Virus record (IMG/VR): IMGVR_UViG_3300049217_000071
Coordinates: 62,001-126,000 of that record
DNA: 64,000 nucleotides
Strand: one strand, 5' to 3'
Of this stretch, positions 3,411 through 41,350 are shown piece by piece. The position numbers were made by a program, and so were the translations under genes. The notes beneath the pieces are model-generated. The model saw only the letters and a program-made list of their open reading frames with translations, ran no database searches and was not told the origin of the DNA. Each line of letters starts with the position of its first letter. Position 1 is the stretch's first letter.

Positions 3411-3851
3411 TTATTGTTTAGCAATTCCTGTGCCTGGTGTTGGTTGTTGTTGAGTACCTGGCTCATACTTCAACGACAAGGTAAGGTTGCTGTAGCTAAT
3501 GGTTTCGCCATTCTTTTGAGATGGAAATAGCTCAATATATTTTTCCAGGTAAGCCTTGACTTGTTCAGACAGTGGGGCGTATTTGCCCGTCAATTCAGGT
3601 GGATCTACACCCGGAGGAGAGACGGAAATAGTACTACCATCTCTTGTCACGTTGATAGCTAAGGCTGCTTGGTCAGTTGCCAGCATCTGCATAAACGGCA
3701 TAATCCCTAGTGATTTGACGCCAGAAGCGTGGGCCACTGAATCCTGAATATGCTGTTGAATCTCATCTTTGAGCGTGTTAGCATCAATACTGGCGTATTT
3801 CTTACGGAATTGCGAGGCAAGCTTGAAGAGGCGTAGTTCAGACTTTTTCAT
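3411..3851 (-). CDS. hypothetical protein
   Basis: 146-aa ORF; N-terminal LFKLASQFRKKYA. Confidence 0.7.
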   Translation of the reverse strand: MKKSELRLFKLASQFRKKYASIDANTLKDEIQQHIQDSVAHASGVKSLGIMPFMQMLATDQAALAINVTRDGSTISVSPPGVDPPELTGKYAPLSEQVKAYLEKYIELFPSQKNGETISYSNLTLSLKYEPGTQQQPTPGTGIAKQ

Positions 3852-3891
3852 ACTCGTATATCATTTTAGTGGTATATAGGATACCGACAAT

Positions 3892-3966
3892 GGGCGATTA
3901 ACTCAGCGGTAGAGTGCAACCCTTACAAGGTTGAAGTCGGGGGTTCGAATCCCTCATCGCCTACCA
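3892..3966 (+). tRNA. tRNA-Val (TAC)
   Basis: cloverleaf, caacc-ctTACaa-ggttg, CCA. Confidence 0.95.
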
Positions 3967-4072
3967 GATTTAGTGATAGTTAGGGGAGCCCCCTGTTGAT
4001 AGTTGCGATTCGACTAAGCTATCTGAACACGAAATCCTGTTGCCATGTCGAATAGGCGCAGGTCACTAGATT
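3967..4072 (+). ncRNA. candidate structured RNA (closing stem, two hairpins, 7-bp kissing loops)
   Basis: 3968-3977 pairs with 4062-4071; loop ATTCGAC (4008-4014) complementary to loop GTCGAAT (4047-4053). Confidence 0.55.
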
Positions 4073-4074
4073 AC

Positions 4075-4148
4075 GGGCGATTAGTTCAATGGCAGAATGC
4101 TTGCATGACTCGCAAGATACAGGGGTTCGATTCCCTTATTGCCTACCA
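4075..4148 (+). tRNA. tRNA-Val (GAC)
   Basis: cloverleaf, cttgc-atGACtc-gcaag, CCA; atypical anticodon loop. Confidence 0.9.
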
Positions 4149-4162
4149 CCAGGAGAAAGTAT

Positions 4163-4363
4163 ATGAGCGGCTCTGTGGAAGATTTTGATGGGTTGTGTGG
4201 TATCATCTACCTTCACGCTTGTTCGGATCAGCAAATTCGTTGCAAGTATGAATTTGGGCACGAAGGCCCTCACTCTTATGAGGGAACCTTAGCCACAGAT
4301 TGGTGTTTCCTGGGAGGTGTTGCCACTCATCCTGTTGAGAAATATACTCAGACAAAGAAGTAA
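4163..4363 (+). CDS. small protein with C-x4-GHxGxH possible metal-binding motif
   Basis: AGGAG RBS; CKYEFGHEGPH. Confidence 0.55.
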   Translation: MSGSVEDFDGLCGIIYLHACSDQQIRCKYEFGHEGPHSYEGTLATDWCFLGGVATHPVEKYTQTKK

Positions 4364-4368
4364 GACAT

Positions 4369-4443
4369 GCCCTGTTGGCGCAATGGTAGCGCGCTAGTTT
4401 CACACTCTAGAGGTTGTTGGTTCGATTCCAACACGGGGTACCA
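4369..4443 (+). tRNA. tRNA-Val (CAC)
   Basis: cloverleaf, ctagt-ttCACac-tctag, CCA. Confidence 0.9.
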
Positions 4444-4481
4444 GATTCGCAATTAACCATTTACATATCAAGGAAAGTCAA

Positions 4482-4706
4482 ATGAAGAAGTTCGTATCTG
4501 CCTTGTTTGCAGCTTTTGCTATCGTAGTTTTTACCGCTTCCACCTCTAACGCTGCTCCTCAGGTTCCTACCGAGAATGCCTGGTGTGGTGCCTGTTGCGG
4601 TATGATCAATGGAGCCCCGGTCGTTGGTTGCGGCTTGGTGAGTCCTTTGGTTTGTGGTTCATCCTGTTGGTGCACCAATGTGCCAGGCGTAGGCTTTGCT
4701 TGCTAA
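4482..4706 (+). CDS. small secreted Cys-rich protein
   Basis: signal-peptide-like N-terminus (MKK-hydrophobic-SNA) and 8 Cys in the last 40 aa. Confidence 0.75.
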   Translation: MKKFVSALFAAFAIVVFTASTSNAAPQVPTENAWCGACCGMINGAPVVGCGLVSPLVCGSSCWCTNVPGVGFAC

Positions 4707-7799: not shown

Positions 7800-8699
7800 A
7801 TGAACAACGCTGAACTAATTAGGGAGCTTCGTGCTTTGACATCTGCTGGTATGAAAGACTGCCGTGATGCCTTGGAAGAGTCCGCCTGGGACTTGCAGAA
7901 AGCCGTCGACATTGTCAAGATCAAAGGCCTCAATATTGCTGATGGTCGCACTGGTCGTGTGGCCTCAGAAGGCAAAGTCGGCATTCTGTTCACATCCCCG
8001 ACTGAACCGGCTCACATTGTCGAGATCAATTGCCAGACTGACTTCGTAGCCAACAGCGATGGTTTCAAGAAGTTTGCTGCCATTACTCTAACTAAGTTGG
8101 GCGAGGTAGGACCTACCTTCACTGCTGCTATGGTAGAGGGTGACCGTAAAGAACTTGTCTCTACAACCAAGGAGAACATTGTGGTTCGTAGGTGGCAGAC
8201 CATTACTCCGGCCGCCTTCTCTCCTCTTACCAGAGTGTTCGGATATCAGCACTCCAATGCCAAGCTGGGCGTTTTGATGGTGCTACAAGCTTCCAATGAA
8301 GCTGTGGCCAATAGCCCCGAGCTACAGATTCTGGGCGAAGACCTGGCTATGCAAGCCTGTGCTATGAACCCTATAGCCGTCTCCCCGGAAAGCGTTCCCC
8401 AAGAAGAGAAGGATCGTCAAAAGGTTATCTTTGAAACTCAACTTCAAGAAGAGAAGAAGCCAGAGAAGATGTGGACCAAGATTTTGGAAGGTAAGTTCCG
8501 TAAGTGGAACTCCGAAGTCTGTCTGCTGGAGCAGGATTCGGTGGTTGTCGAGAAGACAGCCGTGAAGCAAGTAGTCAAGAATGTAGGAACCAAATTGGGC
8601 GGAGAGATTCAAGTGTTGAGTTTCGTTCGCTATCAAGCTGGTGAAGGAATCGAAAAGAAACAAGACAACCTCGCTGAGGAAGTCGCTAAAATGATGTAA
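7800..8699 (+). CDS. tsf: elongation factor Ts
   Basis: ELR..T.AGM.DC..AL, R.ASEG, EINCQTDFVA, AMQ..AM.P, CLLEQ. Confidence 0.95.
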   Translation: MNNAELIRELRALTSAGMKDCRDALEESAWDLQKAVDIVKIKGLNIADGRTGRVASEGKVGILFTSPTEPAHIVEINCQTDFVANSDGFKKFAAITLTKLGEVGPTFTAAMVEGDRKELVSTTKENIVVRRWQTITPAAFSPLTRVFGYQHSNAKLGVLMVLQASNEAVANSPELQILGEDLAMQACAMNPIAVSPESVPQEEKDRQKVIFETQLQEEKKPEKMWTKILEGKFRKWNSEVCLLEQDSVVVEKTAVKQVVKNVGTKLGGEIQVLSFVRYQAGEGIEKKQDNLAEEVAKMM

Positions 8700-8707
8700 G
8701 GTGTAAG

Positions 8708-9007
8708 ATGACCGATAATACGCAAGAATTGATCAACAAGTTGACGAACGCTATCTCCTTCAAGTTCAAGGAAGATGGCACCTCCCCAGGTCTAACTATC
8801 TCTCGCCTGAGAAATAGCTACTACTGTTCTGTGGTCCGCTACCCTAAGGGTTCGGCGCTCTCCACCAAGAACAAGGTCGTAGTGTGCAAGGCCGAAGCTG
8901 ATACTTTGGACTCGGCTCTCAAGACCGTGGCTAAGGAGTTTGTCAATTTGGCCAAGGTGCAACGCGATCCTCTGCAAGAGCTGAGCGATATCGTTCAGGG
9001 GGCCTAA
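8708..9007 (+). CDS. hypothetical protein
   Basis: operon packing. Confidence 0.65.
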   Translation: MTDNTQELINKLTNAISFKFKEDGTSPGLTISRLRNSYYCSVVRYPKGSALSTKNKVVVCKAEADTLDSALKTVAKEFVNLAKVQRDPLQELSDIVQGA

Positions 9008-40140: not shown

Positions 40141-40806
40141 GTGGGGCCAAGTAATTCCTCTAATAGCTCGTGAGATAGCTGATTCACTAACATTTAACAT
40201 TTTGCTCAGTTGAACGAATGTCATCCCTTCTCGATGTAATTTTCGTGCTTGAAGAACGATTTCGTCGGTAAGTTTGGCAAAGCTATTGGCACTACCTAAG
40301 ATTTTTTTACCATAGAATGGATTATCGGCCCCAAAGAACTTTCTATTTGGATTTTGGCTCATTAGCTGTTTAGATTGTTGGCTGTGTTGTTTTCCGAAGA
40401 AACTGTTTCCGGCACCCTGTCTTTGTTCTGACATTGATTGTTTGGTTTCTTCTGAATGATGTTTTCCGAGCATACTTGGTGTTCGAGGTTTTATCACTAC
40501 CGTTTTGGTAGCTAACTGTCCGCCTCCCGTTAGGTTATAGCCAAACTCTTTTTTGTTAGACCGGAAAAATTGAACCCAAAATTGTTCAGCCTCATCTATT
40601 GTTTCTTTTGTGTGTTGCTCAATTTCTATAAACTCAAAATTATCTAAACCATATTTTCTGATGCTTCGATATATTGGCTTGTTGTTGAGCTTCGTGAAAG
40701 CTTCGTATTTATGGCGGCCCTGGCGCCTTTTCATATTGTTAGTTTGCCCTACATAAAGTTTTGAGTTTGTTTTGTTGCGGATAATATAGATAGAATACAT
40801 AGTCAT
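40123..40806 (-). mobile_element. GIY-YIG endonuclease gene (NUMOD3-like repeats)
   Basis: SIY.I.N..N.KLYVGQT, GYNLT.GG, GKHHSEETK, FFGKQHS. Confidence 0.92.
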
Positions 40807-40867
40807 ATTCCTATATCATCATATTGATAGGATGTGGCGGTGCAGGCCGAAATAAGTCGAGGAAATA

Positions 40868-41350
40868 TTGATCGAAATAATTACTGGCGACCTCTTGGCG
40901 TCTAAAGAAAAGTATCTGTTGCATCAGACTAACTGTATCTCTACCAAAGGTGCAGCCGGAGTTGCCAAATCTATTTTTGATAAGTATCCTTATGCTGATT
41001 GCTATGCTGATCGTATCGAAACGTCCAAGCCCGGAACAATCGATATTCGGGGTAATGATCAAGATCAGAGGTTGATAATCAATCTTCACGGTCAGTATTA
41101 TCCTGGTCGCTCCCGATATCCTCTTTCAAGTTTAGATGGTCTAGCTCCTCGTCAGAAATACTTTTACAATGGTTTATTGCGTGTAGCCAAGATCGAGAAC
41201 CTGAAAAGTATAGCATTGCCTTGGAGGGTTGGTTGTGGTCTTGGTGGCGGAGACTGGGAATGGTATTTGGGAACGCTGACTAACTTCGCTAACTATGTAG
41301 GTGAAAAGGGCGTCAGAGTTTGTGTTTACCGTAGAGAAGGAGACGAGTAA
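40868..41350 (+). CDS. macrodomain ADP-ribose hydrolase
   Basis: I.GDLL, HQTNC, GAAGVAK.I, SIALP..VGCGLGGG.W. Confidence 0.92.
   Translation: MIEIITGDLLASKEKYLLHQTNCISTKGAAGVAKSIFDKYPYADCYADRIETSKPGTIDIRGNDQDQRLIINLHGQYYPGRSRYPLSSLDGLAPRQKYFYNGLLRVAKIENLKSIALPWRVGCGLGGGDWEWYLGTLTNFANYVGEKGVRVCVYRREGDE

What the first reader, a model, noticed from the sequence alone, without database searches (positions are those of the whole stretch)
3967..4072. Candidate novel structured RNA with kissing loops between two tRNA-Val genes
Nearly the whole spacer folds. A 10-bp closing stem (3968-3977/4062-4071) encloses hairpin A (3998-4004/4017-4023, loop GCGATTCGACTA) and hairpin B (4036-4044/4055-4062, loop ATGTCGAATA). 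The loops are complementary over 7 bp (ATTCGAC/GTCGAAT), and there is a small AGGGG-agc-CCCCT element. It starts at the base after CCA, so tRNA processing would release it as a discrete RNA. I cannot match it to a riboswitch or ribozyme that I know.
Basis: partly seen in the sequence, partly recalled or inferred. Interest (0 to 1): 0.75.

Follow-up and report, generated by a model that had tools for sequence, protein, structure and literature searches.

The report
Conserved pseudoknotted RNA in phage tRNA array
The 108-base spacer between two valine tRNA genes of an uncultured huge phage is a real, conserved, tightly folded small RNA element that matches no catalogued RNA family; its job is still unknown.

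Summary
Window 3967-4074 fills the whole gap between tRNA-Val(UAC) and tRNA-Val(GAC). It folds into a 10-bp end-to-end stem enclosing three hairpins, and two hairpin loops are complementary over 7 bp. The window is part of a 268-kb huge-phage record with 53 tRNAs and a tmRNA.

I found two full-length homologues at the same position in other metagenomic phage contigs (L019, 78% identical; L038). Sequencing runs gave one partial variant and near-identical copies. Across the three full sequences, 97% of the proposed pairs are kept. Six pairs changed on both sides and still pair: two in the closing stem, two in hairpin B and two in the loop-loop helix. G-U pairs fit only the tRNA strand, and 1-nt indels rule out coding.

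Nothing in Rfam 15 matches. It is not a tRNA, YrlA, HDV-like or hammerhead RNA, nor a homologue of T4 rnaC/rnaD. It is single-copy and patchy: close relatives carry a second tRNA-Val, an ORF or other spacers in this slot.

Best reading: a new small structured RNA co-transcribed with tRNAs and excised by tRNA processing, as T4 species 1/2 RNAs are. Expression, processing and function are untested. A self-cleaving or self-assembling role is not excluded.

The parts
3892..3966 (+). tRNA-Val(UAC), with encoded CCA; the upstream neighbour whose 3' end abuts the element
   Evidence: ARAGORN; Rfam tRNA 69.8 bits
3967..3976 (+). Closing stem, 5' strand (element positions 1-10); G1 pairs with U106 as an invariant G-U
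   Evidence: MFE; RNAalifold; pairs 2-105 (A-U to G-C) and 7-100 (G-C to A-U) covary in L019
3977..3982 (+). Junction strand J1 (UAGUUA), identical in all three full-length sequences
   Evidence: Alignment A7
3983..3994 (+). Hairpin 1: GGGG / CCCU stem (positions 17-20/25-28) with a 4-nt loop. The homologues have AGCG or AGCA loops and a G-C in place of the G-U
3995..4028 (+). Hairpin A: lower 3 bp (3995-3997/4026-4028), a UG bulge, a 7-bp stem (3998-4004/4017-4023) and a 12-nt loop (4005-4016)
   Evidence: U37-G52 becomes C-G in L019, L038 and the X5/X7 variants, and A35-U54 becomes G-U in L038
4008..4014 (+). Loop A kissing strand AUUCGAC (conserved core 4010-4014)
4029..4035 (+). Junction strand J3 (ACGAAAU); only the last base varies among the homologues
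   Evidence: Alignment A7
4036..4062 (+). Hairpin B: outer stem 4036-4039/4059-4062, inner stem 4041-4044/4055-4058, loop 4045-4054
   Evidence: Outer pairs U72-A94 to C-G and G73-C93 to A-U in L038. Inner G76-C91 is G-U in L019 and A-U in X3
4047..4053 (+). Loop B kissing strand GUCGAAU (conserved core 4047-4051)
4063..4072 (+). Closing stem, 3' strand (positions 97-106)
4073..4074 (+). 2-nt 3' tail (AC here, AU in the homologues), directly before the RNase P site of the next tRNA
4075..4148 (+). tRNA-Val(GAC); the element lies 2 nt upstream of it in every carrier found

Best explanation
It is a gene for a small (106-109 nt) structured non-coding RNA embedded in the valine-tRNA operon of a clade of uncultured huge phages.

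**Shown**
- The sequence folds as a four-way junction: a 10-bp helix made by its own 5' and 3' ends, a short G-C hairpin, and two longer hairpins of similar length.
- Hairpins A and B are tied together by a 5-7 bp loop-loop (kissing) helix.
- This fold is kept by compensatory substitutions in independent phage lineages, on the tRNA strand.

**Inferred**
- It is transcribed with the flanking tRNAs.
- RNase P cleavage at the 5' end of tRNA-Val(GAC) makes its 3' end, leaving the 2-nt tail.
- 3' maturation of tRNA-Val(UAC), or an RNase P-type cut at the base of the closing helix, makes its 5' end.
- The blunt-ended, pseudoknot-locked RNA resists exonucleases and accumulates as a stable RNA. It then acts in trans through its invariant junction strands, most likely by binding a protein or another RNA.
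- This is the way phage T4 species 1/2 RNAs (rnaC/rnaD) are produced from its tRNA cluster.

It is an accessory module, not needed for tRNA processing as such, because close relatives lack it.
For: - **Fold.** MFE fold z = -2.63. The same architecture is predicted independently by RNAalifold on 2 and on 3 sequences.
- **Homologues at the same position.** L019:1493-1601 and L038:64-169 (78 bits, E = 4e-21). Near-identical copies occur in soil runs X5/X7, and a third divergent variant in lake run X3.
- **Covariation.** 97.2% of cells are paired and 6 pairs changed on both sides. Only 1 of 500 (paired cells) and 2 of 500 (covariation score) shuffles reach the observed values, and slid controls give 0-1 such pairs.
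P(>=4 compensatory doubles) = 0.007; jointly with <=4 broken pairs, P = 0.001.
- **Strand.** G-U pairs (1-106, 4-103, 37-52, 76-91, 48-81) make sense only on the + strand.
- **Not coding.** The homologues differ by 1-nt indels.
- **Copy number.** One copy per genome.
- **Precedent.** T4 rnaD and rnaC abut tRNA-Arg in the same way, and rnaC has an end-to-end stem.
Against: - No RNA data: no RNA run could be listed, so transcription, ends and stability are unproven.
- Only three full-length, distinct sequences exist, so the statistics are modest.
- The alignment used for counting was fitted to a model built on the nested helices. The kissing pairs were not in that model.
- The inner stem of hairpin B is not kept in L038.
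- No target for the conserved single strand was found in the phage genome above chance.
- No partner protein was identified.
- A stable 10-bp helix directly after CCA is an awkward substrate for the usual bacterial 3'-trailer pathway, so how the 5' end is made is open.
Confidence: 0.5

Rival explanations
1. Self-cleaving ribozyme that cuts at its own boundary, directly after the CCA of tRNA-Val(UAC) or before tRNA-Val(GAC). This would free the tRNAs without host nucleases, as proposed for HDV-like theta ribozymes next to phage tRNAs.
For: - The element starts on the first base after CCA with an invariant G1-U106 wobble.
- Its compact junction, with invariant junction strands clamped by a covarying loop-loop helix, is typical of small ribozymes and aptamers.
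- Ribozymes abutting phage tRNAs are known (PMC10879173).
- A helix directly after CCA leaves no obvious single-stranded site for host endonucleases.
Against: - No Rfam ribozyme family matches, even at E <= 10.
- Covariation pairs the 5' strand with the 3' end, not with an internal strand as the HDV fold requires.
- CUGAACACGAAA lacks stem II and the G8 of the hammerhead core.
- Cleavage after an encoded CCA would leave a cyclic phosphate that blocks charging of the tRNA.
- Relatives process the same tRNAs without it.
Confidence: 0.12
2. Structured but functionally inert spacer. It is selected only to fold on itself so that it does not disturb folding or processing of the neighbouring tRNAs, and it is degraded after processing.
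For: - Other inter-tRNA spacers of this genome and of relatives also close end to end: Lys-Lys 108 nt, Thr-Thr 113 nt, and the 88-nt spacer in L031.
- The element is dispensable in relatives.
Against: - A mere insulator does not need a conserved pseudoknot.
- The loop-loop helix is kept by two double substitutions and by a matched change in L038.
- Junction strands are nearly invariant at 78% overall identity.
- The other stem-closed spacers are not conserved between relatives.
Confidence: 0.2
3. Self-assembling RNA. ROOL and GOLLD RNAs, which lie near phage tRNA islands, also assemble partly through kissing loops.
For: - Covariation cannot tell intra- from intermolecular pairing. A ROOL quaternary kissing loop was first read as tertiary (PMC12286853).
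- ROOL and GOLLD lie near tRNA islands of phages.
- From memory, not tested: phi29 pRNA has an end-to-end helix and complementary loops at positions 45-48/82-85, close to 44-48/81-85 here.
Against: - Junction strands of 0 nt between hairpin 1 and A and between B and the closing stem, and of 6-7 nt elsewhere, favour two side-by-side coaxial stacks. That places loops A and B next to each other within one molecule (inference).
- The Rfam pRNA, ROOL and GOLLD models do not match.
- No assembly data exist.
Confidence: 0.1
4. Decayed tRNA gene or other non-RNA-level feature: a pseudo-tRNA left where relatives have a second tRNA-Val(UAC), or a small mobile DNA element with terminal inverted repeats.
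For: - Relatives L002/L003 and L009/L010 have a tRNA-Val(UAC) copy in this slot.
- The slot is a hot spot for insertions: ORFs in L007 and L024, and a tRNA-like remnant in L025.
- The ends of the element are inverted repeats.
Against: - ARAGORN finds no tRNA even at 60% thresholds or with introns.
- There is no significant similarity to any of the genome's tRNAs.
- In L019 the element sits beside the second-type tRNA-Val(UAC), so it does not replace it.
- Compensatory changes and G-U pairs show selection on an RNA fold.
- It is single-copy per genome.
Confidence: 0.05

Closest known systems
Phage T4 species 1 and species 2 RNAs (rnaC, rnaD)
   Same: Both are small stable RNAs of unknown function, encoded inside a phage tRNA cluster on the tRNA strand and abutting a tRNA gene. 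rnaD starts 1 nt after tRNA-Arg. rnaC pairs its 5' and 3' ends. Sizes are 119-139 nt against 108 nt here.
   Different: There is no sequence or model similarity. rnaC ends in a canonical T-arm plus an acceptor-like stem; the present element has no T-arm and has a loop-loop pseudoknot instead.
HDV-like theta ribozymes next to phage tRNAs (PMC10879173)
   Same: Both are structured RNAs placed immediately downstream of a phage tRNA, possibly concerned with its 3' end. Both start with a G in a G-U wobble at the boundary.
   Different: Theta ribozymes are minimal nested double pseudoknots and are mostly linked to CCA-less tRNAs of gut phages. Here CCA is encoded, the RNA is twice as long, and the 5' strand pairs with the 3' end. 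No HDV-type model matches.
ROOL and GOLLD RNAs
   Same: Both are phage-borne structured RNAs of unknown function found near tRNA islands, with kissing loops supported by covariation.
   Different: Those are far larger: GOLLD members often exceed 800 nt, and both form nanocages wider than a ribosome. Their Rfam models do not match here.
phi29-type packaging RNA (pRNA)
   Same: From memory: about 117 nt, with a helix formed by the 5' and 3' ends, a central junction, and two hairpin loops complementary to each other at nearly the same positions.
   Different: The Rfam pRNA model does not match. pRNA belongs to small protein-primed podoviruses and lies next to the packaging genes, not in a tRNA array. 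The loop pairing there is strictly intermolecular.
Bacterial Y RNA (YrlA) with Ro60/Rsr
   Same: The phage encodes a Ro60/Rsr orthologue. Y RNAs are also about 110 nt with an end-to-end stem and a multi-hairpin module.
   Different: The YrlA model does not match the element, and the closing stem lacks the Ro-binding motif. A different short RNA in the tRNA array (genome 32255-32317) does match that motif.

Membership tests
Any Rfam 15 family (4227 models) | Covariance-model score at or above the gathering threshold | tested here: not met
   Only tRNAs are reported in the window. At E <= 10 on 3800-4500, nothing overlaps 3967-4074.
tRNA / tRNA pseudogene | Cloverleaf with 7-bp acceptor stem, D-arm, 7-nt anticodon loop and T-arm; similarity to tRNA sequences | tested here: not met
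   ARAGORN at 60-80% thresholds, with introns and in the mitochondrial mode, finds no gene. The best local alignment to the genome's 53 tRNAs is within the shuffled range.
HDV-like / theta ribozyme | Nested double pseudoknot: P1 from nucleotide 1 pairs with the strand directly after P3; P2 is closed by the 3' end; catalytic C in J4/2 | tested here: not met
   Covariation supports positions 1-10 pairing with 97-106 as one continuous helix. The only internal partner for 1-7 (positions 48-54) lies 20 nt after hairpin 1 and has a mismatch in each of the two sequences checked (ref and L019; read directly from alignment A6). No HDV model hit.
HDV-like / theta ribozyme | Self-cleavage at the 5' boundary | not testable with these tools
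   This needs an in-vitro cleavage assay.
Hammerhead ribozyme | Core CUGANGA - stem II - GAAA - stem III - UH around a three-way junction | tested here: not met
   The junction reads CUGAACACGAAA (4023-4034), with no stem II between CUGA and GAAA and a C where G8 should be. No hammerhead model hit.
YrlA / bacterial Y RNA | Ro-binding stem motif (GAAUGC ... ACUUGUC in the Rfam consensus) plus a tRNA-like module | tested here: not met
   No YrlA hit on the element at E <= 10. The same model scores 28 bits on a different locus of this genome.
T4 rnaC / rnaD | Homology to the T4 stable RNAs | tested here: not met
   Model R2 gives no significant full-length hit on the T4 tRNA region. blastn of the element against 50,697 phage records finds no match.
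T4 rnaC / rnaD (works-like) | Excised from a tRNA precursor and accumulates as a stable RNA | not testable with these tools
   No RNA run was listed. The position relative to tRNAs is the same.
Paralogous family of tRNA-spacer RNAs within this genome | Other spacers (e.g. the Lys-Lys 108-nt spacer) recognisable as homologues | tested here: not met
   Models R1 and R2 find one copy only. The local alignment of the Val spacer to the Lys spacer has z = -0.27.
Miniature inverted-repeat mobile element | Multiple copies with shared terminal inverted repeats | tested here: not met
   The element is single-copy in each genome. Its terminal repeats covary and contain G-U positions.

The most novel reading that the evidence does not exclude
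The element is a new class of catalytic or self-assembling RNA dedicated to phage tRNA arrays.
Probability: 0.15. Interest if true: 0.85.

Novelty: new variant of a known kind. Interest (0 to 1): 0.55.

Why it matters
Huge phages carry near-complete tRNA sets, and what else is encoded in those arrays is largely unexplored. Stable RNAs inside phage tRNA clusters have been known since T4 (species 1/2 RNAs), yet their function remains unexplained. ROOL and GOLLD show that RNAs near phage tRNA islands can have surprising architectures.

This element is short, easy to synthesise, has a clear testable fold and is backed by natural compensatory variants. That makes it a tractable new case for asking what such RNAs do: tRNA-end processing, protection of phage tRNAs, decoy, or scaffold.

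If it proved catalytic or self-assembling it would be a new RNA class. If not, it is still a new Rfam-type family.

Tried and rejected
- **Paralogue family with the Lys(CUU)-Lys(UUU) spacer.** That spacer is also 108 nt, closes end to end and has two T-arm-like hairpins. I rejected the link: the models do not find it and the alignment is not significant. The Lys spacer is instead significantly tRNA-like.
- **Kissing loops as a by-product of two palindromic T-loop remnants (UUCGAA).** Rejected. L019 and X3 have non-palindromic UUGGU/GCCAA loops that still match each other.
- **YrlA-type Y RNA for the phage Ro60.** There is no model match.
- **HDV-like and hammerhead threading.** Not met; see the membership tests.
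- **Small ORF.** The ATG at 4045 is not conserved, and indels break every frame.
- **Antisense target of the conserved single strand within the phage genome.** Hits are at the chance level.
- **Terminator.** None found.
- **Exact-pattern scans for more homologues.**
  - Four viral scans added only L019.
  - Two bacterial-genome scans gave nothing or chance hits without a model match.
- **Neighbour-protein route.** It gave 24 loci and one new carrier, L038.
- **RNA-seq.** No run was listed.
- **Stop-codon recoding check.** Uninformative.

Full report
**Setting.** The window is bases 62001-126000 of a 268-kb IMG/VR virus record estimated to be 62% complete. The record carries 53 tRNA genes and a tmRNA, all on the + strand, interspersed with small ORFs. 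It is therefore an uncultured huge phage. The reads that hold it come from moss, soil and lake-water metagenomes.

**The observation.** tRNA-Val(UAC) ends with its encoded CCA at 3966, and tRNA-Val(GAC) begins at 4075. The 108 nt between them fold as follows (-32.9 kcal/mol, z = -2.63, 1 of 200 shuffles as good):
- a GGGG/CCCC hairpin;
- hairpin A (3998-4004/4017-4023, 12-nt loop);
- hairpin B (4036-4044/4055-4062, 10-nt loop).

The opposite strand folds less well. Loops A and B contain ATTCGAC and GTCGAAT. A 7-bp match between shuffled versions of these loops occurs in 0.13% of trials. No Rfam 15 family matches at gathering score or at E <= 10. ARAGORN finds no tRNA at relaxed thresholds or with introns.

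**Relatives without the element.**
- RNase HII and a 146-aa neighbour protein led to related phage contigs.
- L002/L003 (RNase HII 77% identical) and L009/L010 (64%) have a second tRNA-Val(UAC) in this slot.
- L007 has a small ORF there.
- L024 has an HNH-type ORF.
- L025, L027 and L030 have a 72-nt tRNA-like remnant ending in ACCA.
- L031 has an unrelated 88-nt stem-closed spacer.
- In L037 and L040 the two tRNAs are adjacent.

The slot is therefore variable, and the element is an accessory module.

**Homologues.**
- Contigs of four metagenome runs laid on the region showed near-identical copies in two soil runs, differing only by T4003C, which turns a U-G pair into C-G.
- A lake run held a copy about 80% identical, with 25 differences and one insertion.
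- A 19-mer that is identical in the window and in that variant found L019:1493-1601 in another viral contig. It is 109 nt, 78% identical, and lies between a second-type tRNA-Val(UAC) and tRNA-Val(GAC).
- Homologues of the 66-aa ORF downstream of tRNA-Val(GAC) gave 24 further loci. A covariance model built from the first two sequences found one more carrier, L038:64-169. It scores 78 bits (E = 4e-21), is 106 nt, and again sits exactly between tRNA-Val(UAC) and tRNA-Val(GAC).
- The models find one copy per genome and none in four related contigs.
- L019's phage is about as distant from the window's phage (RNase HII 73%) as the element-less L002 (77%). The distribution is therefore patchy.

**Covariation.**
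Hairpin 1 has 4 bp with a 4-nt loop, and hairpin A is extended by three invariant pairs below a UG bulge. Hairpin 1 then stacks directly on A, and B stacks directly on the closing stem. The junction strands are 6 and 7 nt.
- With the loop-loop helix added, 97.2% of the 107 cells pair on the three-sequence alignment, and six pairs changed on both sides and still pair. They are 2-105 and 7-100 (closing stem), 72-94 and 73-93 (hairpin B), and 45-84 and 47-82 (kissing).
- Only 1 of 500 and 2 of 500 shuffles reach the observed paired fraction and covariation score. Sliding the partners gives 0-1 double changes.
- The lake variant adds G76-C91 to A-U. L019 shows the G-U intermediate at that pair.
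- The kissing sequences are AUUCGAC/GUCGAAU (window), UUGGU/GCCAA (L019 and X3) and AUUGACU/AGUCAAU (L038). The L019 and X3 pair is not palindromic. This removes my early worry that the match merely reflects two T-loop-like UUCGAA remnants.
- Several conserved G-U pairs fit only the + strand. The homologues differ by single-base indels, so the region is not coding.
- Caveats:
  - There are only three full-length distinct sequences.
  - The alignment was fitted to a model of the nested helices, although not of the kissing helix.
  - The inner stem of hairpin B is absent in L038.
  - The lake variant is known only from a table that leaves four differences unlisted.

**What it is not.**
- It is not a paralogue of other spacers of this genome. 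The Lys-Lys spacer is also 108 nt and stem-closed, but no model recognises it, it is not significantly alignable, and it is itself significantly tRNA-like.
- It is not YrlA, although the phage encodes a Ro60/Rsr orthologue and another locus matches the YrlA stem.
- It is not HDV-like, because the 5' strand pairs with the 3' end rather than with an internal strand.
- It is not a hammerhead, because there is no stem II and no G8.
- It is not homologous to T4 rnaC/rnaD.
- It is not found in 50,697 phage records or in bacterial genomes.
- No terminator lies nearby, and no antisense target was found above chance.

**How it most likely works.**
- *Shown:* a conserved four-way junction with two zero-length junctions, which implies two coaxial stacks. 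Two arms of similar length are joined by a covarying loop-loop helix, and the junction strands are nearly invariant.
- *Inferred:* it is co-transcribed with the tRNAs. RNase P, cutting at the 5' end of tRNA-Val(GAC), leaves the 2-nt tail. The 5' end arises during 3' maturation of tRNA-Val(UAC), or from an RNase P-type cut at the base of the helix.
- *Inferred:* the resulting compact RNA is exonuclease-resistant and acts in trans. This is the T4 species 1/2 pattern.
- No RNA data could be obtained, and the one complex prediction was not folded.

**Verdict.** The element is a new small RNA family, so far with few members, of a known general kind: structured RNAs embedded in phage tRNA clusters. 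Function is unknown, and the decisive tests are simple bench experiments.

Noticed in passing
G000:C1:25220-26797 (L017:1312-2889), outside the window; also G005 (L021/L022): The phage encodes a Ro60/Rsr orthologue. Pfam gives TROVE at 37.5 bits and the Ro60 vWA domain at 67 bits. The best solved relatives are bacterial TROVE proteins and Deinococcus Rsr. The contig that carries the L019 homologue has one too.
   Followed up: partly
G000:C1:32255-32317 (L012:256-318): A 63-nt hairpin matches the Ro-binding stem of the Rfam YrlA model (28 bits, below the gathering score of 69) but lacks the tRNA-like module. It is wedged between two tRNA-like sequences with oversized anticodon loops (L012:173-252 and 318-391) that ARAGORN does not call. 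It may be a minimal Y RNA for the phage Ro60.
   Followed up: partly
G000:C1:41089-41196 (L012:9090-9197): The spacer between tRNA-Lys(CUU) and tRNA-Lys(UUU) is also exactly 108 nt. It is closed by a 13-bp end-to-end stem with a 2-nt tail and contains two T-arm-like hairpins (GGUUCGAUUCC and GUUCGAAUC). It is significantly similar to tRNA T-arms but is not a homologue of the Val element. A relative has an ORF there instead.
   Followed up: yes
G000:C1:157512-157624 and 157327-157436 (L013:713-825, 528-637): The Thr-Thr-Thr tRNA cluster has spacers of 110 and 113 nt. The 113-nt spacer also closes end to end. I did not examine them for conservation.
   Followed up: no
G000:C1:157740-158091, 161750-161822, 163289-163362: There is a tmRNA (tag ADEFAFAEAA) and two tRNAs with the CUA anticodon (amber suppressors; ARAGORN labels them Pyl). 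A crude comparison of open-frame lengths gave no clear sign of stop-codon recoding.
   Followed up: partly
L025:2337-2411 (also L027, L030): In related phages the same slot holds a 72-nt tRNA-like sequence. It has a 6-bp acceptor-like stem, a T-arm (loop UUUGACC) and a 3' ACCA, but only a 4-nt loop where the anticodon loop should be. ARAGORN does not call it.
   Followed up: partly
L031:2317-2404 and 2405-2480: Another relative has an unrelated 88-nt spacer closed by an 8-bp end-to-end stem right after tRNA-Val(UAC) (z = -2.6). It is followed by a degenerate tRNA-Val(GAC)-like sequence that ARAGORN misses.
   Followed up: partly
window 4482-4706; L002:6435-6638: A small secreted-looking, cysteine-rich protein (signal-peptide-like N-terminus, 74 aa) is encoded within the Val tRNA cluster and has a homologue in a relative. 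It has no Pfam match.
   Followed up: no
window 3852-3891; L002:6130-6162; L009:2963-3010 (minus strand): A conserved AT-rich motif lies just upstream of tRNA-Val(UAC) in three relatives (consensus roughly GATATAT..TTTAGC.G.ATATA). It may be a phage promoter for the Val tRNA operon.
   Followed up: no
L012:~8590-8990 (G000:C1:~40590-40990); L024:1651-2337: HNH-type endonuclease ORFs sit between tRNA genes of the arrays: one between two tRNA-Lys(CUU) copies here, one between the Val tRNAs in a relative. This fits the arrays being insertion hot spots.
   Followed up: no
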